IMG/VR virus record: IMGVR_UViG_3300020165_000007
Coordinates: 206,384 to 270,383 of that record
DNA length: 64,000 nt
Reading direction: 5' to 3' (one strand)
Every line of letters begins with the position of its first letter. The first letter of the stretch is position 1. Positions 6,826 to 31,320 of the stretch are shown here, piece after piece. Both the position numbers and the translations under genes were made by a program. Below the pieces are notes generated by a model, which saw nothing but the letters and a program-made list of their open reading frames with translations, had not been told where the DNA came from and searched no databases.

Positions 6826-7680
6826 AATGTTATATATATTGGGGTAGGGAATTAAAGGACGCTGAGATTACACGTTTGAATGACTCGTCTTTTGTGGGAT
6901 TATTATTACTTTTTCCCCACTTATCCACCCCATTGACAGGGGTATCGAATCAGTGTCGGTTACTATCGGTAACCACTCGTATCGTTGATAACTACTCAAC
7001 CGTTACTAAAATCTCTTAAGACTTGCGGTCTCATAAAGGGTCGGCCAACCCACGAGTTGTTTCACAATCGACATCCTTAGACTTGCGGTCTGAAGGAAAA
7101 CTTCGTTGACAAAGGTCCGAAGTATTAGACACCTTTCGTCATCAACGCTCGAAGACTCTTGCTTTTCTAATTGATTTTAGATAAACAACATGGATTTATG
7201 AAAGATGCGCTTCGAGAGAAGTTCTATACCTTTGGAGTACAGAATGCTTCACACCTCTCTGTAAGTCTGTCAACTTACGGTAAGTTAGGACCACGTCGAC
7301 TTGTCGTCTCGGAGACCCCTCATACTGGTACTCAGCCCTACAACACCTGACAGGGTGTGTCGAACCGTCACCTGTAGCTTTTCCTATTGATATCACTATC
7401 TCAACTCTGATATTCCACGGACTCAGAGTGGTTTCATCCCTTTAGCAGTTGCCCTTAGGGTTTTGACCGTAGCCACTTTGTTTAGTTGTCAGAGTAAACT
7501 CTGCGGATATCTGAGAGTTGCTCAACACTCTTCAATCCCTTTAGTCCTGTTACCAGGGTTATCTAACGACGCTAAACCGCCGATGACTAATAACTCACTG
7601 TGATTTTAAAAAAAGGGGGTTAATCTTTTTTGATATAAACTCGATTCAGTGAGTGTTCGTCATTATTATTTCAAAGAACT
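6826..7680 (-). ncRNA. Large structured ncRNA candidate (~850 nt; GOLLD size class, family unconfirmed)
   Basis: No credible ORF over ~1 kb in a gene-dense genome; GC-richer than flanks; many hairpins; TAnnTTTG promoter upstream and terminator downstream. Confidence 0.75.
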
Positions 7681-11776: not shown

Positions 11777-11807
11777 AAAAAAGACTCCTCATTATAAGGA
11801 GTCTTTT
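11777..11807. terminator. Intrinsic terminator
   Basis: AAAAGACTCCT-CATTATA-AGGAGTCTTTT. Confidence 0.85.
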
Positions 11808-13264
11808 AACATAGTAAAAAATTTATCTTGTCTATTATTATCAGGTTTTTCAAAAACTTTTTCCATATTGTACTTACCTATTCTTTTTGGAATTTTTAAT
11901 TCATTGTATTCTATGTAATCATCTTCATAATCTCTTTCAATAACCCCATTAATAACTCCACGGGTTTGTGATAATGAGAATCTTTTATAATTTTTATCAA
12001 AACCTGTATTCACTAACCACACTTTTACTTTGTGGTTATTCTCAACCCTATTTCTAAACATATTGGTGTAATCAGATATTTTCCTTGGTAGGAATGGGTC
12101 CCCAAAACAAGGTGAGAACGTTGTGGTAGGTTCAGTAACTCCAACTTCAGTACCCGCAACTTTTGAAGTATACCCTAACTTAAAGTACTCAACTGCTTGT
12201 TCTGTATTTAATAATGATATAGGTGGTAATACACCAAAAGCGTCAAAAGATAGAAAAAATATATTCTCAACCCCTAAACCTCTACCTGGCATACTTACCT
12301 TAACCTCACGTCTTATTTGGTCCAATGGATAAGAAACCCTAATGTTCTCTGTTATACTACTATCACTAAAATCAACATCACCTTCCTCATCAACTATAAC
12401 ATTCTCTAATAATGAGGTATTTGTTTTAGTGAATTTACTATGTATTGCGTCCCATATTACAGGTTCTTTATACTCATCTAAATCTATGAGTTTAGCGTAA
12501 CATCCTCCTTCAAAGTTATATATATAATCATCATACCATCCGTGTTCATCATCACCAATAAAATACTTTAAAGGGTCAGAAGATAGGGTAGTCTTACCAG
12601 TACCTGATAGTCCAAAAAATAAATTAACACCTCTACCGTCTTTAGTATTAGAATTAGCAGAACAATGCATCGGTAAGACTCCTCTATCAACTAAAAGAGT
12701 ATTCATAACGGTAAAGACACTTTTCTTTATCTCACCCGTATAACTCGTACCAGCTATTAAGATTTTTCTATCATCAAAATCTAATATTACAAAATTTTCA
12801 TTTTTAACATCTTCAGGTCTATTTTTACTTACAAAATCAGGGCAATGTAATATTTCCCATTCAGTAAATGTAGTTGAGAATGTTGTGACAAAACTTTGTG
12901 GGTCAATTAACATATTATTAAAGAATATGATAGCCCATGGTTCTGTACTTTCTATATTAAAAGTTGCACTGTGTTCATAATTGTAACCTGCAACTTGTCT
13001 AGCTCTGAAAGTTTTTGCGTTTTCTATATATTCTTTAATTTCATTTTTTAATGAAATATAACTATCTCTACTAACTCGTTGGTTTATGATTCTTTCAAAA
13101 TCGATAGTCTTATCTGTATATTTCCCCTCAGAAAAGTATCTATCTTTAGGTGACCTACCCGTAAATTTACCAGTATTAAAATGTAATAAACCCTCTTTGG
13201 TGGTCTTCATTCCTCTCTCCTTAGCAAGGGTCATTAATTGCTCAGTAGTTTCGTAATAAACCAT
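11792..13264 (-). CDS. pckA: Phosphoenolpyruvate carboxykinase (ATP)
   Basis: TGRSPKD, MHCSAN, FGLSGTGKTTLS, IGDDEHGW, FEGGCYAK, LENV, WLVNTG motifs. Confidence 0.95.
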   Translation of the reverse strand: MVYYETTEQLMTLAKERGMKTTKEGLLHFNTGKFTGRSPKDRYFSEGKYTDKTIDFERIINQRVSRDSYISLKNEIKEYIENAKTFRARQVAGYNYEHSATFNIESTEPWAIIFFNNMLIDPQSFVTTFSTTFTEWEILHCPDFVSKNRPEDVKNENFVILDFDDRKILIAGTSYTGEIKKSVFTVMNTLLVDRGVLPMHCSANSNTKDGRGVNLFFGLSGTGKTTLSSDPLKYFIGDDEHGWYDDYIYNFEGGCYAKLIDLDEYKEPVIWDAIHSKFTKTNTSLLENVIVDEEGDVDFSDSSITENIRVSYPLDQIRREVKVSMPGRGLGVENIFFLSFDAFGVLPPISLLNTEQAVEYFKLGYTSKVAGTEVGVTEPTTTFSPCFGDPFLPRKISDYTNMFRNRVENNHKVKVWLVNTGFDKNYKRFSLSQTRGVINGVIERDYEDDYIEYNELKIPKRIGKYNMEKVFEKPDNNRQDKFFTMLKDSL

Positions 13265-16067: not shown

Positions 16068-17699
16068 TTAATCTACCCTAAATACATAATAATCGTGACC
16101 ATCAATTCTAATATCATATTCTACACCATCATAATGTGATATATTGTGACCAACACCATCCGTATCCACCGCATCCTCAATTATCTCATCTTTATTTAAG
16201 AATTCCTCAAGGTCTAAATCGTAATCTTTAATATAATTTTGTGGGTTAGACCTAACGTCACTTAAATACTCATCCACCTTTTTTTCTATCATTTCCTCAG
16301 TGGGTTCTCCCTCAGGACTTAATGTTAAATCATCTCTCTCCTCTTCTAACTCATCTATTTTATCATATACTTCACCCCTTTCATCACTACTATAAGGTAA
16401 CGAGTCAGTATCTCTTGTCTTTCTATAAAGTTCTTCAATCTCTTGGTCTAATTCTTCGTGTCTTTCCTTTTGTTCTGTAGATAACGGTAGTTCATCTTCA
16501 TCGAATATAGATTCCCAATCATCTCTAACATAATCATAATACCAACTCTCAAAATAACTGACAATAGAATCTATGTCTATGTAATTCATCAAATAGTCTT
16601 CGTTAAATGACTCCATTAACCCTACGTCATTAACCAAGTCGTTTAATCTAGATTTTGCGAGTTCGTAAACATCATCCCATTCACCCACAATATATTCACT
16701 ATCTGTTTCATTTTCACCCATCCATTTAAATGCTAAAATTTCTCCAGGATAAAAATTATTAGTCTCAGGTATTAAATTATATATGTCCTCATCTTCACCA
16801 ACTTCATTCACTAACCACTCATTTCTTAAACCACTCATCACAGCATTTGCCTTTCTTCCTACCTCATCTAATTCGTTGTTTTCAGGATTCCACGCATCTC
16901 TTTCTCTTATATCGTCCATCCTCCTTAGTAATCTTTCTCTTCTTATTCTATCATCTCTTTGGGTTCGTCTTTGTAACTCTTGTTTCGCTTTAATTTCGTC
17001 TTTAAATAATTCGATATCACTAGCGTAATTTGTTGACATGTATCTTTGTATAACATTATCAATCTTTTCAAACTCAGGTGTCCCTAAAATCCACCCCACT
17101 TTAAATGAATCATCAGGCGCATCATAGAAAATTTGTTTTCCATCATATTTTTGTAACATTGCAACTTTATAAAACTTACTACCTGATTTAGCTTTTTTAT
17201 CTAAAAAATAAAATAATTTACCGTCTCTATTGTAGGACATAAAGTGACTATCACTACTTTTAGCTGCTGTACACCATTTACTGCCCGCTCCGTAATAACA
17301 ACTAGCCTCATGTGTCTTTGGTGTTATTACAGTAAACCTGTCGTCTTCATACACTATGTCGGCCCCATCTATTTTTTTAACGTCCCTCCTTACCTTATTT
17401 TCGTGTTTTTCAATCGCATCTGTAATATCTTTTAAAGTATTGTATTGATTAATATCTTTTATTTCTAAATTTTTTTGAAATTTTATAAACTTCTCTACCG
17501 CAATTTTCGCTTTAACTAAATCATCATTTACATTTTCAGATGAAATGACCTTACCTAAAAAGTTTAAAAACTTTTGGTTGGATGATAGTTCTATAGATAA
17601 TAAAAATATTTTTTTTATATCCTCAGGTTTGAACTTATCTTTATATCTTAATAAAAACTCGTCTTTTCTTCCTTCTAATAATACTTTACTAAGATTCAT
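16068..17699 (-). CDS. Large hypothetical with ASCYYG..KWCT domain and acidic C-terminal region
   Basis: 543 aa; MNLSKVLLE leader; paralogous domain in 27475..28818; TATTTAT at 17717-17723. Confidence 0.8.
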   Translation of the reverse strand: MNLSKVLLEGRKDEFLLRYKDKFKPEDIKKIFLLSIELSSNQKFLNFLGKVISSENVNDDLVKAKIAVEKFIKFQKNLEIKDINQYNTLKDITDAIEKHENKVRRDVKKIDGADIVYEDDRFTVITPKTHEASCYYGAGSKWCTAAKSSDSHFMSYNRDGKLFYFLDKKAKSGSKFYKVAMLQKYDGKQIFYDAPDDSFKVGWILGTPEFEKIDNVIQRYMSTNYASDIELFKDEIKAKQELQRRTQRDDRIRRERLLRRMDDIRERDAWNPENNELDEVGRKANAVMSGLRNEWLVNEVGEDEDIYNLIPETNNFYPGEILAFKWMGENETDSEYIVGEWDDVYELAKSRLNDLVNDVGLMESFNEDYLMNYIDIDSIVSYFESWYYDYVRDDWESIFDEDELPLSTEQKERHEELDQEIEELYRKTRDTDSLPYSSDERGEVYDKIDELEEERDDLTLSPEGEPTEEMIEKKVDEYLSDVRSNPQNYIKDYDLDLEEFLNKDEIIEDAVDTDGVGHNISHYDGVEYDIRIDGHDYYVFRVD

Positions 17700-18857: not shown

Positions 18858-19133
18858 TAGGAATTCTTTGACCTTGTGAATTGCTTCATTTAAGTCTTTG
18901 AACGATAGGTCTGGAGCTAACAATTGTATATCAGGTTTTTCCCCTTCTTTAATCTCTACTAATGTTAGAGCGGGTAGATATTCATTTTTAGTTACATCAA
19001 CAAATTGTTTATATTCTTTTTCATGTTCATCGACATTTCTTTCAATATACTCTAAATTTTCTTCTTTAAACATTTTTTTTAAAGAATAACAGTGAGGACA
19101 CCCTTCCATACTATATAAGATTACTGTTTTCAT
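18852..19133 (-). CDS. Glutaredoxin-like protein
   Basis: LYSMEGCPHC..LP thioredoxin-fold motif. Confidence 0.88.
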   Translation of the reverse strand: MKTVILYSMEGCPHCYSLKKMFKEENLEYIERNVDEHEKEYKQFVDVTKNEYLPALTLVEIKEGEKPDIQLLAPDLSFKDLNEAIHKVKEFLL

Positions 19134-19450
19134 TATAATACGTTTTTAACCATTTCTAATATTTGATTTTCACTAACTAAACCAACTTTATTACCCACAT
19201 TTTCTCCTCCACTAAAAATTTTAATATAGGGAATAGAACGTACCCCTAGTTGAGTAGCCATTTGTTGGTCTTCTTCAATGTTAAATTTATAAACTTTCAT
19301 TTCACTTCCTTCTTCCTCCAATTTTTTAGCAACACTTTCGATAATCGGACTTAACATTCTGCAAGGTCCGCACCAATCCGCGTACAAATCTACTATAAAT
19401 TTTTCACCTGAATTTATTTTTTCTTGCAATTCCTGTGCATTTATTTTCAT
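19133..19450 (-). CDS. trxA: Thioredoxin
   Basis: YADWCGPC, GVRSIP. Confidence 0.95.
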   Translation of the reverse strand: MKINAQELQEKINSGEKFIVDLYADWCGPCRMLSPIIESVAKKLEEEGSEMKVYKFNIEEDQQMATQLGVRSIPYIKIFSGGENVGNKVGLVSENQILEMVKNVL

Positions 19451-19797
19451 ATTGTTTTATATTTTTTAAGTTGATTTAAGTAGAAGATTATACTATCAGA
19501 AGAATCTTCATTACATAAGTAATAAAATTTATATGTATTTTCATATTCATTTTTAGTAAAGTATAATAATGTTTTAGTATCTAAAAACTGTATTAATCCT
19601 TTATTGTAAATAGTGACTTGACCATCAAAATATTTTTTTGACCATATAATTTTATTTTTTTTTAAAGTTATTCTTAACGCGTCAATAGTATAAAAATCAG
19701 TCTCAATAATAGAAGGTAAACTTCCAATTATATTCTCAGATAAGATTGATACTTTATTTGGTATACCATAATTGTTATGTTTTTCTTTATCTTTCAT
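19447..19797 (-). CDS. Hypothetical protein
   Basis: 116-aa ORF abutting neighbours. Confidence 0.65.
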   Translation of the reverse strand: MKDKEKHNNYGIPNKVSILSENIIGSLPSIIETDFYTIDALRITLKKNKIIWSKKYFDGQVTIYNKGLIQFLDTKTLLYFTKNEYENTYKFYYLCNEDSSDSIIFYLNQLKKYKTI

Positions 19798-20867
19798 TAA
19801 ACTTCAAGTAATTCTTTTTCTATACTTTTTGAGTTTTTTACATAATCAATACTATCACTAATTACTTTAGTTATTTTATATGGGTCAGCGTTAGACGCAG
19901 GTCTTCTATCTTCTAGATACCCCTTCCACGTTTTACTCGTTTGTAGTGGAACTCGTATAGACGCCCCTCTATCAGAAACACCCCAACTAAATTTAGTAAT
20001 ATTCTGGGTTTCATGTAACCCTGTTAGTCTCATCTCATTACTTGAACCATAATTATTAATGTGTATATCATGTCTATCCTTGAAAGATTTAAATATATTT
20101 TGATAGTACTCTTCATCTCCGTCTTCCCTCATTTTTTTATTAGAGAAGTTACAGTGAAGTCCTGAACCGTTCCAATCACCTGTAACAGGTTTAGGATGAA
20201 ATTCGATATCATAACCGTAATCCTCAGACATCTGATGTAAAATATATCTAGTAATCCATAGGTCATCTCCAGCCTTAATTTTACCCTTACTGAATACTTG
20301 GTATTCCCACTGACCTAGCATGACCTCAGCGTTCGTTCCAGTGATGTCTATACCGGCCATTATACAGTTTTCCATATGTTTATCAACAAACTCCCTACCT
20401 GTTACTTGTCCGTTACCTACACCGCAATAGTACTTTCCTTGTGGTTCAGGAAATCCATTTTTAGGAAAACCTATAGGTTTGCCGTCTTTCATTAGAGTAT
20501 ATTCTTGTTCAAATCCAAACCATAAATCCTCATCATCTTCATTAAATAATCCCCTACTATTACTTTCGTGTAATGTACCATCAGGGTTTAAAACTTCACA
20601 TAGAACTAAATAACTTTCTAATAATCCATTATTCAGTGGATTTGGATAAAGTGTTACAGGTTTTAGTATACAATCGGAAAAATGTCCCTCAGCTTGTTCA
20701 GTGGACGACCCATCGAATGACCATTCAGGGCAATCAGTTAACCCTACACCATGAACCGTTTTACCATGAATAGTGTGTGTAGGTGGGTTGATTACTTTTA
20801 CTTTACTTCTGAGATTAGGTTCAGGATTATACCCATCTAACCATATGTATTCTAATTTAATTTTCAT
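19797..20867 (-). CDS. glnII: Glutamine synthetase type II
   Basis: EYIWLDG, WSFDGSST, FGFEQEY, NAEVMLGQWEYQ, HPKP..DWNGSGLH, RLTGLHET, SIRVP, EDRRPASNADPY. Confidence 0.93.
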   Translation of the reverse strand: MKIKLEYIWLDGYNPEPNLRSKVKVINPPTHTIHGKTVHGVGLTDCPEWSFDGSSTEQAEGHFSDCILKPVTLYPNPLNNGLLESYLVLCEVLNPDGTLHESNSRGLFNEDDEDLWFGFEQEYTLMKDGKPIGFPKNGFPEPQGKYYCGVGNGQVTGREFVDKHMENCIMAGIDITGTNAEVMLGQWEYQVFSKGKIKAGDDLWITRYILHQMSEDYGYDIEFHPKPVTGDWNGSGLHCNFSNKKMREDGDEEYYQNIFKSFKDRHDIHINNYGSSNEMRLTGLHETQNITKFSWGVSDRGASIRVPLQTSKTWKGYLEDRRPASNADPYKITKVISDSIDYVKNSKSIEKELLEV

Positions 20868-20896: not shown

Positions 20897-21553
20897 TTAT
20901 TTAACCGGAATTGGAGTACCAACGGGATATGGTGACCCTTCTTTCGCAGCAGTGACAGAAGTCATACCTGAATCTACAGGAATAGCAAATCTTAATGGAA
21001 TTGCCGCCTCATTTAAAGGACCATAACATTTGGATAATATTATACCATTGTCAAGTGTGTCTATTATGTCACATGGCATTGCGAACATATTACTCATACT
21101 GGTACTTGGTGAATTTGTGTCAACAATAAACTTACGATTAGTTGGTGGTAACCATTCCCATCCGTTAGTTTCAGGATTAAATTGTGGTACTGTATCACTT
21201 GATGTAAAGAACCAAAAGAATGACCATGTTGTTCCGTCTGTCCCATCAGGAGTTTGTTGATTTTCTTTTACATTAAACTCTCCCCAAGTTTCACTTTTAC
21301 CTTCCATAGCCAAGTTGGAAATTGATAGTCCGTTCATAACAGGACAAATTGCACAACCTTCGTCGAACTCAGTTCCTTGTACAGTTATTTTTTTACCTGT
21401 AGGTACAGCACCTGACGCCCCACAGAATGAGAAAGAACCTTCATGTAGTACAACCACTTCTTCAGGTTCAGGAGCGCATGTATCCACTTCCGTTTGTTGT
21501 CCACAACTTAGTAGTAAGAAGGATGACAACAATGTTAATAATGTTTTTTTCAT
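20897..21553 (-). CDS. Cys-rich lipoprotein of unknown function
   Basis: Signal peptide ending in LLLSC lipobox; several further Cys residues. Confidence 0.75.
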   Translation of the reverse strand: MKKTLLTLLSSFLLLSCGQQTEVDTCAPEPEEVVVLHEGSFSFCGASGAVPTGKKITVQGTEFDEGCAICPVMNGLSISNLAMEGKSETWGEFNVKENQQTPDGTDGTTWSFFWFFTSSDTVPQFNPETNGWEWLPPTNRKFIVDTNSPSTSMSNMFAMPCDIIDTLDNGIILSKCYGPLNEAAIPLRFAIPVDSGMTSVTAAKEGSPYPVGTPIPVK

Positions 21554-21640: not shown

Positions 21641-21672
21641 AAAAAAGGGGTTCAAAAACTGAACCCCTCTTT
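21641..21672 (-). terminator. Intrinsic terminator after the TBDR gene
   Basis: AGGGGTTCA-AAAAC-TGAACCCCT with 10-nt T run on the minus strand. Confidence 0.85.
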
Positions 21673-21698
21673 CATATATTTTATAATATTATCGTAAA

Positions 21699-24452
21699 TT
21701 AGAAGTTATATCTTAAAGATGCATTCCAAGTTCTACCAAATCCAAACCACACTGAGTTACGTGTGTCAATACCGTTCCACGTATCTGATGTTTCAGATGC
21801 GTGAATATTAGTGTTTGACTCCGCAATGTATGTAGTGTCGAATAAGTTATTTACGTTAACTCTAAACGTTGCATTGTTACCTAACAAGTCAAAACGAGTG
21901 GTAACACCCAAATCAACTAAATTGTATGACGGTAACTTCAACGCCCCTTGGTTATCGGGTGTGAAGAAGTCAGAACCTGTGATTGAGTAGTCAGCGTAAA
22001 GTCCGTCAACATATCTCATACCTAAGTCTACATTCACACCTCTAGTTACTCTGTAGTCAACACCTAAGTTTCCAACAACTTGTGCTGCGTCACCAACTTT
22101 AGCCCCTTCAGTATAAAGAACTCCTGTACCAATCTCTTCTTGATTCTCATCAAACAAGGTGGTTTCAAAATCCTTTGTATACTTCCAATCTCCCAATGAT
22201 AACATACCTGTAAGTTTTAGGTTGTTAGTAGGTCTATATGTAGACTCTAACTCGATACCATTGTGTTGAACGTCAATATCTCTAAACTGTGCAAATCCAT
22301 CGACACCTTGAGCATTAGTCAATGAAAGTGCTCTAAATCTATTACCCCATGTTGTTGCATATGCATTAACATTAACAGTAAGCTCGTCACCTAAGTATCC
22401 GTAACCTAACTCAAATGAAGTAATTTCTTCATTTTGTAAGTCGTCATTAATGTCATTACCATAACTTGGGAATACCGCTGAGAAGTTTGGTTGACGTGAG
22501 ATGAATCCCGCGTTAGCAAAAACATTAGACTTTTCATCGATATTATAGTTAGCACCACCTTTAATGTATCCACCACCTAAATTAGCCGTTTCTGAAATTG
22601 GATTACCTGGTTGGTCAAAGTAATCTTCTCTTTGGAATGATTGGTTCGATAACCCCGCTTGTACAACCGCGTTTATTCTTCCATCATCATTATATTCAAT
22701 AAGTCCGTTTACACCGGCCCATCCAACGTTTCCTACATTATAGTAGTCAATTTTTGGACCGTTAAGACCTGTGTTATTAAACGGACTAGCGTTTACAGTT
22801 GTGTTAACAAACTGACCTACACTATTATCATTACCTGTTGAGTAGTATGCGTCAAAACCCATTAGGTTATTTACTGTACGATAGTGATAACCTTTGTACT
22901 TTCTGAGGTCAATACCTACAGAAGCCCTAATCTTGTCTTTATCGTACTCTAAATTAGAGATTGCACCTACCCAGTCGTGTGAGTTCATAGACGCTCTACG
23001 AATCATCCCACTTCTATTAACACCACCTTCATCATATCCATTTGAACCGATGAGTTGTCCGAAAAAAGGACTGTCCATTAAGGTTGAGTCAGGAATTGTT
23101 CCGTCAGCATCAATACCATAAGTCTGTGCCCCTGATTGGTTATCAGCGACAATAGCGTCAAAATCAATTGTACCATCATCGTTACGAAATTGTGTTGTAC
23201 TGTCTTCATACATGAATTCATACAAATCCTTTCTATAAGGATGGACATCGTAGTTTCTACCACGAGGACCTGTTCCTCCACCTCGACCAGCAGAACCATA
23301 GACTGAAGTATTCAATGTTAAATCTTCGTTGATGTCCCAATCCCAGTTAAAGGTTGCAAGTGGTTTGTTATAAAAGTTTCTTCTCATAGAGAACTCTTCC
23401 CCATTTAAAGTACCTCCGTTTGTGTTCCAACGAGCGTTGATACCATCGTCATTCTGTTCACCAAATGTTTGAAAGTCTCTAATAGAAACCCAAACGTCTC
23501 TTTGGTGGTGCCATTGACCCGCACCTAAAATAGATAGGTTCAATGCGTGTTTTGAACCTTCAGGTTGGTAACCTACAGCTCCGAAGTATGTCCAACCTTC
23601 ACCACTGGTGTTGTCGACATATCCATTACCTGCCCATCTACTCATTAAGAACGATGACGCCCATCCATTCTCATTTTTACCGGTATTGTAGTTAACACTT
23701 GTCTTAGTGTAACCATCATTACCAATAGTTTCAGATACTGAACCACCTTGTTCTTTCTCCGCCGCTTTAGTAGAAATAGAAACGGTACCACCAACAGATG
23801 GAACCGCAAGACGAGTAGCACCCAATCCTCTCTGGATTTGAATACCTGAAGCAACGTCAGTAAGACCTTGCCAATTAGACCAATATACCCATCCATTTTC
23901 CATATCATTAACAGGTTGACCGTTAATTAGGAATGATGTGTTACGTTGGTCGAAACCTCTAAGAGATATTCTTGAGTCACCATAACCACCACCTTGTTTC
24001 GTAGCATAGACACCAGGTGTTCTATTCATGATTTCAGGGAATTCTTGGTTTCCGACTTTCAAAGCAATCTCTGACGGACCAATGGTTGATACCGCAACTG
24101 GTGTTTCTCTCACTTTCGCAAAGTCAACAACGTTAACGATTACGGATGCCTCATCCAAACCCAACGCAGTAGCGGTTAATGATATGGTACCCATATCTTT
24201 TAGTGCCGGTGTAGTTATTGTTTCATACCCGATAAAACGTACAACTAGGTTTCCTGTGGCCTCACTGTTGAGAGTGAATTCACCTGATACATTAGTTGAT
24301 GTTCCTCGTGTGTTACCTTCAAGATAGACATTCGCTCCGATGAGCTCATTACCTGTCTTAGAGTCAACAACTTTACCTGTAATTTGGGAGAATAGACTCG
24401 TAGTTGAGACCATCATTACTCCTAAGATAAACAATCGATTAATTAATTTCAT
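21699..24452 (-). CDS. TonB-dependent receptor with N-terminal carboxypeptidase-regulatory-like domain
   Basis: Signal peptide; GKVVDSKTGNELIGANV; plug TPGVY..ISLRGF..LINGQP; C-terminal NNLFD..GFGRTWNASLRYNF. Confidence 0.93.
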   Translation of the reverse strand: MKLINRLFILGVMMVSTTSLFSQITGKVVDSKTGNELIGANVYLEGNTRGTSTNVSGEFTLNSEATGNLVVRFIGYETITTPALKDMGTISLTATALGLDEASVIVNVVDFAKVRETPVAVSTIGPSEIALKVGNQEFPEIMNRTPGVYATKQGGGYGDSRISLRGFDQRNTSFLINGQPVNDMENGWVYWSNWQGLTDVASGIQIQRGLGATRLAVPSVGGTVSISTKAAEKEQGGSVSETIGNDGYTKTSVNYNTGKNENGWASSFLMSRWAGNGYVDNTSGEGWTYFGAVGYQPEGSKHALNLSILGAGQWHHQRDVWVSIRDFQTFGEQNDDGINARWNTNGGTLNGEEFSMRRNFYNKPLATFNWDWDINEDLTLNTSVYGSAGRGGGTGPRGRNYDVHPYRKDLYEFMYEDSTTQFRNDDGTIDFDAIVADNQSGAQTYGIDADGTIPDSTLMDSPFFGQLIGSNGYDEGGVNRSGMIRRASMNSHDWVGAISNLEYDKDKIRASVGIDLRKYKGYHYRTVNNLMGFDAYYSTGNDNSVGQFVNTTVNASPFNNTGLNGPKIDYYNVGNVGWAGVNGLIEYNDDGRINAVVQAGLSNQSFQREDYFDQPGNPISETANLGGGYIKGGANYNIDEKSNVFANAGFISRQPNFSAVFPSYGNDINDDLQNEEITSFELGYGYLGDELTVNVNAYATTWGNRFRALSLTNAQGVDGFAQFRDIDVQHNGIELESTYRPTNNLKLTGMLSLGDWKYTKDFETTLFDENQEEIGTGVLYTEGAKVGDAAQVVGNLGVDYRVTRGVNVDLGMRYVDGLYADYSITGSDFFTPDNQGALKLPSYNLVDLGVTTRFDLLGNNATFRVNVNNLFDTTYIAESNTNIHASETSDTWNGIDTRNSVWFGFGRTWNASLRYNF

Positions 24453-24490
24453 TAGTTTTTTTTTAAGTGTTTATTGGTTGTTTATATAAT

Positions 24491-24519
24491 AAAAAACTAC
24501 CCCCACTCTGAGGGTAGTT
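24491..24519 (-). terminator. Intrinsic terminator upstream of the TBDR gene
   Basis: AACTACCC..GGGTAGTT hairpin with T run on the minus strand. Confidence 0.75.
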
Positions 24520-24530
24520 CTAAATTCAAT

Positions 24531-28843: not shown

Positions 28844-29689
28844 TTACGAATTATAATTCAAAATTAATAGTTCGGTTCCTTTATTTTGTGTTTTTCCTTT
28901 TTTAGCTGACGCCGCTTTGACGAAGTCTTTCTGTTCCCAAAGATAATCATTTTTTGGAAACCACCCATTTAAAAGTTCAAAATCATAGTAAGATAATGAA
29001 AACTTTCCTTTGATATTGTTTAGAATTTTTGCCAACCTTTCGTGGTCATTCCTATCAAAGTCGTGATTAGAATAGTAGTTCTCTGTTTTCCAGTACGGTG
29101 GGTCTAAGTAAAAGTATGTCTTATCTCCATCATATTTGTTAATGAGTTCTTCAAAGTCCATATTTTCAACAAAGTTAATTTTTGAGAATTTGTCTATCCA
29201 CTTTTCGTTTTTCAGTTTATCTCTAAAAGTAAGGTATTTTGATTTGTACTTACCCTTTAAGTCGATGTAATTTGATGACTCTGGTTTACTGCCGCTGAAT
29301 ACCTGTGTAAGAATGTAAGCATACTTAGCAGCAACATCATAGTCAGGGTAATTTATTTCAAAGTCATCTGCAAATATCTCAGACTGGAACTCTTTGAATA
29401 GGTCTTTATATTCTGTAGGTGTGTTCTCCACTCCTCGTTGTTGACAAGGGATAGACTCAACAGATTTAAGAAGTTCTGTAGGGTTTTGCACACACATAAA
29501 GAGATTGTAGTTCAACGGATTGAAATCGTTATAAACAATGTTCTTTAGATTTGGGTACTCATCCAAATCCATATTGTAGTAACACCAAAACATACCTCCG
29601 AATGGTTCAACATATGTCTCCATATCTTTAGGGTAATATGGGACTATCCATTTACCTATCCTACTTTTTCCTCCTATATAACTAAGCAT
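28844..29689 (-). CDS. Dam/D12-class N6-adenine DNA methyltransferase
   Basis: YIGGKS, EPFGG, YNDFN, LDPPY; TATATTTG at 29707-29714. Confidence 0.92.
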   Translation of the reverse strand: MLSYIGGKSRIGKWIVPYYPKDMETYVEPFGGMFWCYYNMDLDEYPNLKNIVYNDFNPLNYNLFMCVQNPTELLKSVESIPCQQRGVENTPTEYKDLFKEFQSEIFADDFEINYPDYDVAAKYAYILTQVFSGSKPESSNYIDLKGKYKSKYLTFRDKLKNEKWIDKFSKINFVENMDFEELINKYDGDKTYFYLDPPYWKTENYYSNHDFDRNDHERLAKILNNIKGKFSLSYYDFELLNGWFPKNDYLWEQKDFVKAASAKKGKTQNKGTELLILNYNS

Positions 29690-29840: not shown

Positions 29841-30776
29841 TTATACATAATGTATTAATAATACTATAGCTACTGAAACAAGTAGACCAACTAATAACTT
29901 TAAGAAATCTTTAGCTACTATAGGAAATACTTGTTTTAAATTACCTTTCTTAGTTAGGTATGTGTTTAAAGCAAGTTCTCTACCACACAACAATCCAACA
30001 AATACCCATGTAGTTGACATAGGGACGTTATTTAATTGTTTAAAATACAATAGTAGGAAAGCATACACTAAGTCAATTAAAGTCGCTGAGCGAACGTATT
30101 TTGTATTTTGTTTGTCAAGAACTATCTGTTGTATCTTACCACCTTGTTGATAAAATATCCATCCCAATCCTATAGTAAAAAAGGTTATAACACCTGACAG
30201 TTCAACAACTGAAAGTTGTCTTGGTAAGAACACTGCGATGTTTGCGATATCGTGTGAAAGCCACGTAAACCACAAAAAACTTGTGGTTAACCATTGTCCT
30301 ATTCTCCAATATTTTTTATTACTTTCTTTTATGTCGTTATCTTCGTTGAATACTCCTGATATTAAGAACCATAATCCGTACGCCGCCACAGCTGCCAGAC
30401 CATATCCTACAATACTTTTCATTAACATCTTCTCTAATACAAATGTTGACGCAAAAGCCGATAATACCAAAAATGATGTAGACACAGGAATACCTTTTCT
30501 TGTTAGTGCAACTAAAGCAAGAGGTGCAAGTGCGTGATACCACTGTACTTCTTGGAAGGGTATCTTATCTAATCTACCAAAGGATATGTCACCGTCATAT
30601 ACATTCCATCCATATATTAATGTGAAAGCCATTACGACTGAAGCTGCTAACCATAATACATACCATTTAAATTTTTCTTTATTTGATGCAATCCATGTGC
30701 CGAGCGTTTGTACACTATCATTGGCAATTACTGAGTAACCCGCCAATGTAAATCCTATTAACGAAAGTAATGTCAT
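29841..30776 (-). CDS. PiT/PHO4-like phosphate (or sulfate) permease
   Basis: Multi-TM; duplicated PiT-like signatures IANDSVQTLG and SHDIANIA, plus PVSTS and PMSTT. Confidence 0.7.
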   Translation of the reverse strand: MTLLSLIGFTLAGYSVIANDSVQTLGTWIASNKEKFKWYVLWLAASVVMAFTLIYGWNVYDGDISFGRLDKIPFQEVQWYHALAPLALVALTRKGIPVSTSFLVLSAFASTFVLEKMLMKSIVGYGLAAVAAYGLWFLISGVFNEDNDIKESNKKYWRIGQWLTTSFLWFTWLSHDIANIAVFLPRQLSVVELSGVITFFTIGLGWIFYQQGGKIQQIVLDKQNTKYVRSATLIDLVYAFLLLYFKQLNNVPMSTTWVFVGLLCGRELALNTYLTKKGNLKQVFPIVAKDFLKLLVGLLVSVAIVLLIHYV

Positions 30777-30780
30777 ATTT

Positions 30781-31227
30781 TTAAATTTTTATAGAAAATC
30801 TGAATCTTATGGTTTTAGAATTATCCCATCCAATTCTGTAAACAAATTTATTATTTTTATATGGTATGTCAACAGCTACTGCCAAATTATATAATTTATC
30901 ATACCAAAATTCTTGTTGTACCCAAAGTTTGAACTTTTCAAATTTGTAAATTAATCTAGGTTCAAACGTTGGTTGGTTATTTTCAATCTTATAATGTAGT
31001 GGTACACTAAATACTATCGGTGATTCTGCAAAATTAAAGTTGTGTCTGTATGTGACTCTATTCTCATCCAACTTTGTTTTGTGTCTGAGTTCAAGTCCTC
31101 CCTTCTCAGTAATTTTGTGACTAAATGTTATGTAGGATTTTCCGTTGGTTCTCATCTCATAACCTATTTTTTGGGATAGGAGACTACAACTGATTAATAA
31201 CATTAAAAATGTTAGTGTTAGTTTCAT
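30781..31227 (-). CDS. Small outer-membrane beta-barrel-like protein
   Basis: Signal peptide; alternating hydrophobic beta strands; C-terminal RFRFSIKI. Confidence 0.6.
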   Translation of the reverse strand: MKLTLTFLMLLISCSLLSQKIGYEMRTNGKSYITFSHKITEKGGLELRHKTKLDENRVTYRHNFNFAESPIVFSVPLHYKIENNQPTFEPRLIYKFEKFKLWVQQEFWYDKLYNLAVAVDIPYKNNKFVYRIGWDNSKTIRFRFSIKI

Positions 31228-31287
31228 AATAATCTATTTCTAACCATATATAGAAATAGATTATTTAAAATTTCACATTATCTAATA

Positions 31288-31305
31288 TGTTAACCTTGTG
31301 TTAAC
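31288..31305 (-). promoter_or_regulatory. Pho-box-like direct repeat (GTTAACA-N4-GTTAACA)
   Basis: Two perfect 7-mers with 11-bp period, ~60 nt upstream of the barrel/PiT operon. Confidence 0.5.
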
Positions 31306-31320
31306 AATTAAGAAACAATA

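What the first reader, a model, noticed from the sequence alone, without database searches (positions are those of the whole stretch)
21641..24519. Full-length TonB-dependent receptor as a terminator-bounded viral cassette
Seen: a 917-aa intact TBDR with signal peptide and C-terminal Phe, no SusD-like partner next to it, and terminators on both sides. An 11-bp-period repeat TGTTTAT (24468-24474, 24479-24485) just upstream resembles the TGTTAAC pair before the PiT operon. Inference: viral nutrient uptake (P, Fe or B12), or replacement of a receptor for superinfection exclusion.
Basis: partly seen in the sequence, partly recalled or inferred. Interest (0 to 1): 0.6.

Follow-up and report, generated by a model that had tools for sequence, protein, structure and literature searches.

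The report
Jumbo-phage copy of a flavobacterial TonB-dependent transporter
A 270-kb marine phage of Flavobacteria-like hosts carries an intact, selection-maintained copy of a core host outer-membrane TonB-dependent transporter as a self-contained gene unit. The same transporter family occurs in hundreds of other marine phage contigs, so this is a real, recurrent but not unprecedented kind of phage "auxiliary" gene whose cargo is still unknown.

Summary
Window 21699-24452 (-) is an intact 917-aa TonB-dependent transporter (TBDT). It has a signal peptide, a CarboxypepD_reg domain, a TonB box, a plug, a barrel and a terminal Phe. Rho-independent terminators sit on both sides and no SusD is present. 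The contig is a genuine jumbo phage.

The gene is not an accident. It occupies the same slot (198-aa gene, TBDT, GlnII, thioredoxin) in relatives whose TBDT is only 75% identical. dN/dS is 0.03-0.14. The 47-nt leader holding the ATAAACA-N4-ATAAACA pair is invariant where synonymous sites are saturated.

The family is a stand-alone, core-genome ortholog of marine Flavobacteriales (60-70% identity; plug 91-98%). At least 442 IMG/VR contigs carry it, in several unrelated phage contexts. Partition trees conflict with strong support, so alleles recombine.

Most likely it is a working transporter made during infection, relying on host Sec, BAM and TonB-ExbBD. The cargo is unknown. SusC and siderophore-receptor memberships fail, and no riboswitch is present. 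Superinfection exclusion is not excluded. The claimed likeness to the GTTAACA pair is not supported.

Phage TBDTs were already reported (Mar_Mega_1 in 2021; a huge-phage OMP survey in 2026). This is a new member of a known kind. Expression could not be tested.

The parts
24493..24521 (-). Rho-independent terminator ending the upstream 198-aa gene. It forms the upstream boundary of the TBDT unit.
   Evidence: 13-pair hairpin followed by a T-run. Compensatory stem changes occur in L005, L010 and L020.
24453..24492 (-). Conserved A/T-rich leader between the hairpin and the ATG; with the last 7 nt of the terminator's T-run it makes the 47-nt block counted as invariant. It contains the direct repeat ATAAACA-N4-ATAAACA (24468-24485; TGTTTAT on the + strand) and an A9 tract before the ATG. 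It is presumed to be a gene-specific promoter/operator plus an unstructured translation-initiation region.
   Evidence: 47 nt are identical between the window, L010 and L002. L020 differs by a 1-nt insertion and L005 by 2 nt, while TBDT dS is 0.6-1.25. The pair is unique in the genome. The leader lacks both the host-type TAnnTTTG motif seen before bacterial orthologs and the phage-wide TATTTAT motif.
24384..24452 (-). Signal peptide (aa 1-23), with cleavage probably before Gln23.
   Evidence: Translation. The same MKLINRLF... N-terminus occurs in all syntenic phage copies. The cleavage site is inferred from the sequence pattern.
24207..24383 (-). N-terminal CarboxypepD_reg-like domain (aa 24-82).
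   Evidence: Pfam PF13715 at 56.5 bits and PF13620 at 35 bits. PDB sequence hits to the SusC N-terminal domain 9hfj and to 6ytc.
24123..24158 (-). TonB-box segment (aa 99-110, LDEASVIVNVVD).
   Evidence: It aligns with the L-x-E-V-V-V-T-S-G-V-I-D TonB box of orthologs. The same variant form occurs in the nearest bacterial clade. TonB binding is inferred.
23787..24113 (-). Plug domain (aa 114-222).
   Evidence: Pfam PF07715 at 47 bits. Identity is 91-98% to all phage and bacterial orthologs.
21702..23747 (-). Beta-barrel (aa 236-917) ending in the C-terminal Phe (beta-signal).
   Evidence: Pfam PF00593. AF2 barrel pLDDT is 80-90. Foldseek matches FhuA, Fiu and FecA at E 1e-30 to 1e-24.
21646..21668 (-). 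Rho-independent terminator of the TBDT gene.
   Evidence: GGGGTTCA/GAACCCC stem followed by T10. It is conserved with a compensatory G>A/C>T change in L002 and L020, and L010 has a different hairpin at the same place.
20897..21553 (-). Neighbouring 218-aa lipoprotein gene (lipobox LLSC). It is a separate moron and not a conserved partner of the TBDT.
   Evidence: Translation. There are >850 homologs, found in other phage contexts. It is replaced or absent in L002, L005 and L010. None of 10 other TBDT-phage records holds it.

Best explanation
The gene is a phage-borne, host-derived ortholog of a core, stand-alone TonB-dependent outer-membrane transporter of marine Flavobacteriales. It is carried as an autonomous unit: terminator, conserved phage-specific leader, gene, terminator.

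Proposed mechanism (inferred): during the probably long infection cycle of this jumbo phage the gene is transcribed from its own leader. The pre-protein is exported by the host Sec system via its signal peptide. The host BAM machinery folds it into the outer membrane, using the C-terminal ...YNF. The host TonB-ExbBD complex energises it through the TonB box, since the phage record itself encodes no TonB or ExbB. The transporter then maintains or raises import of the same, still unidentified, substrate that the host ortholog imports. This would be analogous to cyanophage PstS or psbA sustaining a host bottleneck function.

Shown here: integrity, domain set, phage location, vertical retention, purifying selection, mosaic allele exchange, and wide occurrence in phages.

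Inferred only: expression, localisation, TonB coupling, transport, and benefit to the phage.
For: - Complete TBDT architecture.
- The genome is a genuine phage.
- The same slot is occupied in relatives with 98, 91, 76 and 75% identical TBDTs.
- dN/dS is 0.029 (dS 0.34), 0.083 and 0.14.
- GC3 is 0.305, close to the phage median of 0.235 and far from the nearest bacterial clade at 0.57-0.79, so the gene is a long-term resident.
- The plug is 91-98% identical to bacterial orthologs, and the long loops (64-69%) are hardly more variable than the strands (70-72%).
- The TonB-box segment has the same form as in the nearest bacterial clade.
- 442 IMG/VR contigs carry the family, in at least five different phage gene contexts.
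- One of these phage groups also encodes a full TonB.
- The leader is invariant although neighbouring synonymous sites are saturated.
- A transcribed TBDT in Lak phages (preprint 10.64898/2026.10.24.761521) and a TBDT in a marine megaphage (PMC9723777) show that such genes exist and can be expressed.
Against:
- The substrate is unknown. Bacterial orthologs lie among housekeeping genes (pgi, M23 peptidase, DUF3108), without a nutrient operon or riboswitch.
- The AF2 plug is poorly modelled, with pLDDT below 50.
- No recognisable promoter was found in the leader.
- Sequence conservation could partly be imported by recombination with host alleles rather than maintained in the phage.
Confidence: 0.55

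Rival explanations
1. Receptor-landscape remodelling or superinfection exclusion. The host ortholog is a phage receptor, and the phage-made variant dilutes, masks or replaces it (or acts as a decoy), so that later phages adsorb unproductively. Transport would be secondary.
For: - TBDTs are classic phage receptors; FhuA complexes with T5 pb5 and Llp are among the fold hits.
- Alleles are mosaic, with strongly conflicting partition trees, as expected for a locus under phage-host conflict.
- The N-terminal domain is lineage-specific.
- A phage lipoprotein gene lies next to the TBDT in this genome.
- The 2026 preprint proposes this role for huge-phage OMPs.
Against: - An exclusion or decoy role does not need a plug that is 91-98% identical or a retained TonB-box segment.
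- The long loops are not hypervariable relative to the strands.
- Adding barrels does not remove host receptors that are already in the membrane.
- The lipoprotein is not a conserved neighbour.
Confidence: 0.2
2. The transporter is repurposed for something other than the host's nutrient. Examples would be scavenging nucleic-acid or nucleotide breakdown products or another phage-specific need, or outward transport as proposed for Oar-type CarboxypepD_reg TBDTs.
For: - The architecture (CarboxypepD_reg domain plus TBDT without SusD) differs from classical small siderophore/B12 receptors.
- Phage contexts are rich in nucleotide metabolism: RNR, ThyX, SHMT and non-specific endonuclease genes lie beside the gene.
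- A CarboxypepD_reg outer-membrane protein is needed for DNA uptake in Riemerella (PMC8459023). This is a lead only; no sequence comparison was possible.
Against: - The phage copies remain 65-70% identical to the bacterial core orthologs, with a near-identical plug, which argues for the same cargo as in the host.
- The Riemerella gene is paired with a DUF5689 protein, and that pairing is not seen here.
Confidence: 0.12
3. The gene is a passenger or an artefact: a recently captured host fragment, an assembly chimera, or bacterial contamination of a 'viral' contig, with no role for the phage.
For: - The gene's GC (0.40) is above the phage mean (0.33).
- IMG/VR contains some misassigned contigs, and some MAG contigs look mis-binned.
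Against: - The same slot is occupied in independent assemblies from different samples, including 311-kb and 301-kb contigs.
- Phage genes flank it on both sides.
- GC3 is close to the phage's.
- dN/dS is 0.03-0.14.
- The phage-specific leader is conserved.
- None of the viral loci carries the bacterial pgi/M23/DUF3108 context.
Confidence: 0.03

Closest known systems
Putative TonB-dependent receptor (SusC) of the marine megaphage Mar_Mega_1 (PMC9723777). UniProt A0A8D9FQQ5, the only full-length viral TBDT in BFVD, is labelled 'TonB-dependent receptor SusC [uncultured marine phage]' and is probably the same protein; that identity is my assumption and was not checked.
   Same: A full-length 22-strand TBDT encoded by a very large marine phage, interpreted as an uptake AMG. 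Foldseek E is 4e-29.
   Different: It is a different TBDT family, only 13% identical and 805 aa. Mar_Mega_1 is a ~650-kb megaphage with no host assigned. That paper reports no analysis of selection, synteny or allele exchange.
22-stranded TBDT of Lak megaphages and the huge-phage OMP repertoire (bioRxiv 10.64898/2026.10.24.761521).
   Same: Phage-encoded beta-barrel outer-membrane proteins with Bacteroidota hosts, host homologs, frequent transport genes nearby, and transcription detected.
   Different: The Lak copies match only ~20-30% of P0001 at 26-32% identity. They come from the gut rather than the sea. Here the family is a single orthologous group that also occurs on phage contigs whose CheckV-based size estimates fall below 200 kb.
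Core stand-alone CarboxypepD_reg-TBDT ortholog of marine Flavobacteriales (e.g. in Polaribacter, Robiginitalea, MS024-3C and Cryomorphaceae MAGs).
   Same: 60-70% identity over the full length, the same domain order, a 91% identical plug, and no SusD neighbour.
   Different: The bacterial genes sit after DUF3108, M23 peptidase and pgi, and carry a host TAnnTTTG-type promoter. The phage gene has its own leader, its own signal peptide and N-terminal domain lineage, and phage-like codon GC3.
Cyanophage psbA and pstS (host-derived AMGs with phage-host allele exchange). This comparison rests on established knowledge and was not tested here.
   Same: A host core gene retained in many phage lineages, purifying selection, and mosaic genes indicating recombination between phage and host pools.
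   Different: The product is an outer-membrane transporter that needs host Sec, BAM and TonB. There is no functional or expression evidence yet, and the direction of transfers is unresolved.
SusC/RagA transporters of polysaccharide utilisation loci.
   Same: The N-terminal CarboxypepD_reg domain, the TonB box of DEVVV type in most orthologs, and Bacteroidota origin.
   Different: TIGR04056 matches only model positions 2-162 (68 bits against a 368 cut-off). There is no SusD in the phage or beside the bacterial orthologs.

Membership tests
TonB-dependent transporter superfamily | Plug domain (PF07715) above the gathering score | tested here: met
   47 bits against a 23.9 cut-off, aa 114-222. The whole-genome scan gives 52.7 bits.
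TonB-dependent transporter superfamily | C-terminal 22-strand beta-barrel (PF00593) enclosing the plug | tested here: met
   PF00593 at 51.5 bits against a cut-off of 27. AF2 barrel pLDDT is 80-90. Foldseek E is 3e-30 to FhuA, with ~830 aligned columns. The strand number was not counted exactly, and the plug placement is low-confidence.
TonB-dependent transporter superfamily | TonB box N-terminal to the plug | tested here: inconclusive
   The aa 99-110 segment LDEASVIVNVVD aligns with the L-x-E-V-V-V-T-S-G TonB box of orthologs and matches the variant form of the nearest bacterial clade. Binding to TonB was not tested.
TonB-dependent transporter superfamily | Signal peptide and C-terminal aromatic beta-signal | tested here: met
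   The N-terminal hydrophobic leader and the terminal ...RYNF are read from the translation. They are conserved in all 174 copies examined except those cut off by contig ends. No signal-peptide predictor was available.
SusC/RagA family (TIGR04056) | Full-length match above the curated cut-off | tested here: not met
   68.1 bits against 368.25; only model positions 2-162 are matched.
SusC/RagA family (TIGR04056) | Adjacent SusD-like lipoprotein | tested here: not met
   No SusD_RagB or SusD-like_3 match above cut-off in the 270-kb record. None lies beside the bacterial orthologs.
TonB-dependent siderophore receptor (TIGR01783) | Score above the curated cut-off | tested here: not met
   96.1 bits against 223.5.
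BtuB-type cobalamin receptor (the automatic JGI name given to homologs) | Cobalamin riboswitch in the leader, or a specific family match | tested here: not met
   No Rfam match near the gene in the window or in 9 bacterial ortholog loci. No BtuB-specific NCBIfam hit. Absence of a riboswitch is only weak evidence.
Phage auxiliary (host-derived) gene / moron | Lies inside a bona fide phage genome, flanked by phage genes, and is conserved among related phages | tested here: met
Phage auxiliary (host-derived) gene / moron | Cellular homologs exist and the phage copies are under purifying selection | tested here: met
   Bacterial orthologs are 60-70% identical. dN/dS is 0.03-0.14.
Phage auxiliary (host-derived) gene / moron | Own transcription signals (promoter and terminator) | tested here: inconclusive
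   Terminators with covariation lie on both sides, and the leader is conserved. No recognisable promoter consensus was found.
Phage auxiliary (host-derived) gene / moron | Expressed during infection | not tested
No other route was tried.
Phage superinfection-exclusion outer-membrane factors (Llp, Cor, Lom type) | Blocks adsorption or entry of incoming phage | not testable with these tools
   Only indirect arguments are available.

The most novel reading that the evidence does not exclude
The host ortholog of this transporter is itself the receptor of these Flavobacteria phages. The phages carry, shuffle and express their own alleles, keeping the phage-lineage N-terminus while swapping the barrel. 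Infected cells would thus keep importing an essential substrate while the surface is re-tooled against superinfection. The phage pool would then become a major vehicle for allele exchange at a core host outer-membrane locus, a psbA-like gene circuit acting on a phage receptor.
Probability: 0.12. Interest if true: 0.75.

Novelty: new member of a known kind. Interest (0 to 1): 0.5.

Why it matters
Marine Flavobacteriia are the main degraders of algal-bloom organic matter, and TonB-dependent transporters are their dominant surface proteins.

A single transporter ortholog group sits in at least 442 IMG/VR contigs classed as viral. It is under purifying selection there and recombines with other alleles. 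This suggests that phages of these bacteria routinely invest in one particular outer-membrane import route.

Identifying the cargo would reveal what limits phage production in these hosts. It would also assign a function to a conserved, unannotated core TBDT of Flavobacteriales.

If the protein instead serves surface remodelling, it would be a large-barrel counterpart of Lom- or Llp-type exclusion.

Either way, the locus offers a compact, testable unit: a leader with a direct repeat, one gene and two terminators.

Tried and rejected

2. Substrate by sequence. NCBIfam gave only sub-threshold hits. The PDB sequence search found only N-terminal-domain fragments.

3. Substrate by fold. Foldseek returns generic TBDTs (FhuA, Fiu, FecA, OprC, PqqU) at 12-15% identity, with no discrimination between them.

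4. Substrate by context. Bacterial neighbours are housekeeping genes, and Rfam found no riboswitch.

5. Lipoprotein as TBDT partner. Rejected: the lipoprotein is variable or absent in close relatives, its family occurs in other phage contexts, and 0 of 10 other TBDT-phage records hold it. For that reason no complex-prediction job was sent.

6. ATAAACA as a genome-wide phage regulatory motif. Rejected: the enrichment is ordinary and the pair is unique. The genome-wide upstream motif is TATTTAT.

7. Shared motif with the GTTAACA pair. Rejected as unsupported.

8. Terminase_6C scans to type the other TBDT phages. Uninformative, because the model does not hit even the window's own genome.

9. Single-sequence scan for phage TonB. 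It found only the one close relative.

10. Direction of transfer. Not resolvable: the full-length tree mixes recombinant segments, the nearest bacterial clade has a very different GC, and some 'bacterial' MAG contigs look like mis-binned phage.

11. My first alignment of the region upstream of the PiT-like operon used wrong coordinates. It was replaced by a pattern search.
Full report

Yes. The only long ORF in 21641-24519 is 21699..24452 on the minus strand, 917 aa, ending ...LRYNF.
- Pfam finds CarbopepD_reg_2 (aa 24-82), Plug (114-222) and the TonB-dependent receptor barrel (376-870), all above the gathering scores.
- The N-terminus, MKLINRLFILGVMMVSTTSLFS followed by Q, reads as a Sec signal peptide. 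This is from sequence only; no predictor was available.
- Aa 99-110 align with the TonB box of the orthologs.
- An AlphaFold2 model built on a 44-row alignment has a confident barrel (pLDDT 80-90) but a poorly placed plug.
- Foldseek matches FhuA, Fiu, FecA and other 22-strand transporters at E 1e-30 to 1e-24 and 12-15% identity.

Both terminators exist. Upstream is a 13-pair hairpin with a T-run at 24521..24493. Downstream is GGGGTTCA/GAACCCC with T10 at 21668..21646. Both are kept in related phages with compensatory stem substitutions, which is good evidence that the hairpins matter.

No SusD-type protein is encoded anywhere in the record.

**2. Is it viral?**

The window is the last 64 kb of a 270,383-bp IMG/VR record, CheckV 88%.
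- Outside the window the record encodes tail-fibre, baseplate-wedge, ribonucleotide-reductase, DnaB and helicase proteins.
- Inside the window are SbcC-like, PRPP-synthetase, Dam, DnaJ, thioredoxin and GlnII genes.

The TBDT is therefore embedded in a jumbo-phage genome, in a stretch rich in host-like metabolic genes.

**3. Is it a stable phage gene?**

The exact-protein look-ups and the IMG/VR scan recovered the same arrangement in independent assemblies. The order is: 198-aa protein, TBDT, variable small ORF, GlnII, 116-aa protein, thioredoxin, glutaredoxin. The TBDTs in these assemblies are 98% (one on a 311-kb contig), 91%, 76% and 75% (a protein seen on contigs up to 301 kb) identical.

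Nei-Gojobori estimates:

| Pair | dN/dS | dS |
|---|---|---|
| window vs L002 | 0.029 | 0.34 |
| window vs L005 | 0.083 | 0.63 |
| window vs L010 | 0.14 | 1.25 |

.

Third-position GC of the gene is 0.305. That is close to the phage median of 0.235 and far from the nearest bacterial clade at 0.57-0.79. The raised overall GC (0.40) noticed in the profile therefore probably reflects amino-acid make-up, not a fresh capture.

**4. What family is it?**

The genome scan found orthologs at 60-70% identity across marine Flavobacteriales: Polaribacter, Robiginitalea, MS024-3C, Cryomorphaceae, Schleiferiaceae and many MAGs. Paralogs follow at about 42%.
- In 15 of 38 bacterial loci the gene follows DUF3108, an M23 peptidase and pgi on the same strand. 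Other neighbours are RecJ, UvrC and thymidine kinase.
- It is thus a core-genome, stand-alone transporter, not part of a polysaccharide utilisation locus or a metal or vitamin operon.
- It fails the SusC/RagA and siderophore-receptor models.
- No riboswitch precedes it.
- The automatic JGI label 'cobalamin receptor' on homologs has no specific support.

The plug is 91-98% identical between P0001 and every group of phage or bacterial orthologs. Strands are 70-72% identical and long loops 64-69%. The N-terminal domain is only 37-38% identical. Loops that are barely more variable than strands, plus a near-invariant plug, point to a conserved cargo.

**5. How widespread is it in phages?**

The IMG/VR scan found 442 contigs encoding a relative; the best 80 are 62-100% identical. 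Besides the jumbo-phage slot there are at least four other contexts:
- ThyX, M15 peptidase, TBDT, 4HBT.
- A large group in which the TBDT lies beside homologs of the phage's AAA_28 protein and a 76-aa zinc-ribbon protein, often with Metallophos, GT2 and RNR genes.
- Cpn60, NUDIX, non-specific endonuclease, TBDT, CHU_C.
- Class II RNR, SHMT, TBDT.

None of the viral loci carries the bacterial pgi/M23/DUF3108 context. CheckV figures imply that most of these contigs come from phages of roughly 130-300 kb. Two related contigs (L185, L031) also encode a complete TonB. The window's own record has no TonB_C or ExbB.

**6. Phylogeny and recombination**

I built a 124-row tree rooted on the paralogs. 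Phage and bacterial rows are interleaved, and at least 9-10 label changes are forced by well-supported branches. A bacterial clade is nested among the jumbo-phage copies.

The full-length tree is a blend, because sliding-window identities show mosaicism:
- In the first 160 alignment columns, the window, L005, L010 and L020 are 83-94% alike and only 37-69% like the bacterial clade.
- In columns 320-480, L010 is 89-91% like that bacterial clade and 62-78% like the window.

Careful partition trees confirm the conflict:
- N-terminal partition: (window, L005, L020, L010) at 99/99.
- Middle partition: (L010, L026, three bacterial rows) at 100/100, against (window, L005, L020, L008, L018, L021) at 100/99.

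Alleles of this gene therefore recombine, while the phage-lineage 5' end is kept. I cannot give the direction of transfer for three reasons. The nearest bacteria are too GC-rich to be recent partners. Sampling of low-GC hosts is incomplete. Some 'MAG' contigs look like mis-binned phage.

**7. The leader and the repeat**

The 47 nt from the terminator's T-run to the ATG are identical in the window, L002 and L010. L005 differs at 2 positions and L020 by a 1-nt insertion. This holds although synonymous sites of the adjacent gene are saturated between these genomes.

The ATAAACA-N4-ATAAACA pair lies 33 nt (34 in L020) before the ATG in all 12 syntenic loci. It is unique in the genome. It is absent from the more distant syntenic L080 and L081, from other phage groups and from bacterial orthologs.
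- Bacterial orthologs show the Bacteroidota TAnnTTTG-type element (the consensus is from established knowledge). The phage leader lacks it.
- The leader also lacks the phage-wide TATTTAT(A) motif (74 hits, 11.6-fold enriched, mostly 15-25 nt before starts).

The gene therefore has its own, lineage-specific control region. A direct repeat with one helical turn of spacing is the classic geometry of OmpR/PhoB-type regulator sites. That is an inference, not a result.

The GTTAACA-N4-GTTAACA pair before the PiT-like operon exists. It is not found in the relatives that carry that region, so the proposed link between the two pairs is unsupported.

**8. The neighbours**

The 218-aa downstream ORF starts MKKTLLTLLSSFLLLSC, a lipoprotein signal.
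- It belongs to a highly conserved family of more than 850 metagenomic proteins, which occurs in other phage contexts without a TBDT.
- At this position L002 has an unrelated 144-aa ORF, L005 has nothing and L010 has a 63-aa ORF.
- None of 10 other TBDT-phage records contains it.

It is a separate moron, so I make no binding claim and sent no complex prediction.

**9. Mechanism**

The best-supported reading is a working transporter made during infection. The host Sec system exports it, BAM inserts it, and the host TonB-ExbBD energises it. It sustains or increases import of the host ortholog's unknown cargo (confidence 0.55).

Surface remodelling or superinfection exclusion remains possible (0.2). 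It explains the plug and TonB-box conservation, and the unremarkable loop variability, less well. A repurposed cargo (0.12) and a passenger or artefact (0.03) are less likely.

**10. Comparison with the literature**
- BFVD holds one full-length viral TBDT, labelled as from an uncultured marine phage and 13% identical to P0001. I take it to be the Mar_Mega_1 protein, but did not check this.
[quoted passage not shown] These include a transcribed 22-strand TBDT in Lak phages, and the authors propose receptor-landscape remodelling (10.64898/2026.10.24.761521).
- Searches for phrases such as 'phage-encoded TonB' found nothing.
- No record in the INPHARED phage collection carries a close relative; the best is 34% identical, on an uncultured gut contig.

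The kind is therefore known. What I found no report of, within the library searched, is this particular orthologous family: its breadth in marine Flavobacteria-type phages, the selection on it, its mosaic evolution and its conserved leader.

**11. Limits**
- No host is assigned and no cargo is identified.
- The plug is poorly modelled.
- dN/dS values are pairwise approximations, with saturation for the distant pair.
- The large tree is a quick LG+G4 search.
- My ORF calls in the scripts are simple longest-ORF calls.

Noticed in passing
window 6859-7259 (-): Full-length GOLLD RNA (Rfam RF02032, 299.8 bits, E 9e-85), a large structured non-coding RNA known from phages and prophages.
   Followed up: no
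L002:1176-4765 (also L003, L004), corresponding to window 29841-31227: The closest relatives (98% TBDT) carry a second, unrelated TBDT-like gene (814 aa; CarboxypepD_reg plus Plug; 27% identity over the N-terminal part only) together with a 382-aa beta-helix gene. At the same place the window has a 148-aa plus 311-aa PiT-like pair (PHO4 hit below cut-off). This looks like a swappable transport-gene slot between DnaJ and Dam.
   Followed up: partly
window 20897-21553 (-): The 218-aa lipoprotein belongs to a very conserved family (>=63% identity among the 31 homologs aligned) of more than 850 metagenomic proteins, with invariant His37, Cys44, Cys67 and Cys70 (CAIC motif). It has no Pfam family and is seen in several phage contexts. 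Its function is unknown; it may bind a metal or act in exclusion.
   Followed up: partly
whole record G000; e.g. window 16068-17699 upstream, 18027 upstream: The motif TATTTAT(A), followed by an A-run, lies mostly 15-25 nt before start codons. There are 74 hits and 11.6-fold enrichment. It is probably a phage promoter class, and the TBDT and its metabolic neighbours lack it.
   Followed up: partly
window 31228-31320 (-): A perfect ~15-bp inverted repeat lies immediately before the ATG of the 148-aa gene, and GTTAACA-N4-GTTAACA lies 70 nt upstream. Part of the inverted repeat is kept in L010 and L011; the direct repeat is not.
   Followed up: partly
L185:9973-10623 (+); L031:1335-1979: A phage group carrying the same TBDT family also encodes a complete TonB, with membrane anchor, Pro-rich spacer and TonB_C domain.
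   Followed up: partly
window 19797-20867 (-), 19133-19450 (-), 11792-13264 (-): GlnII-type glutamine synthetase (405.6 bits against a 500 cut-off), thioredoxin and glutaredoxin are syntenic with the TBDT in all relatives, forming a metabolic-gene island. The relatives also carry a PEPCK homolog nearby; window 11792-13264 matches that L002 gene at 85% identity, so I take it to be PEPCK, but I did not scan it against Pfam or NCBIfam.
   Followed up: no
L113, L114, L121 (genome contigs): Short contigs binned into Arcticimaribacter and Crocinitomicaceae MAGs share phage-type flanking genes with IMG/VR loci (46-92% identity). They are probably phage contigs mis-binned as bacterial, which blurs the counts of phage-host transfers.
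   Followed up: partly
window 28844-29689 (-) upstream: The Dam-type methyltransferase gene is preceded by ACTATATTTGTAG, a host-like TAnnTTTG element. This suggests at least two promoter classes in this region.
   Followed up: no
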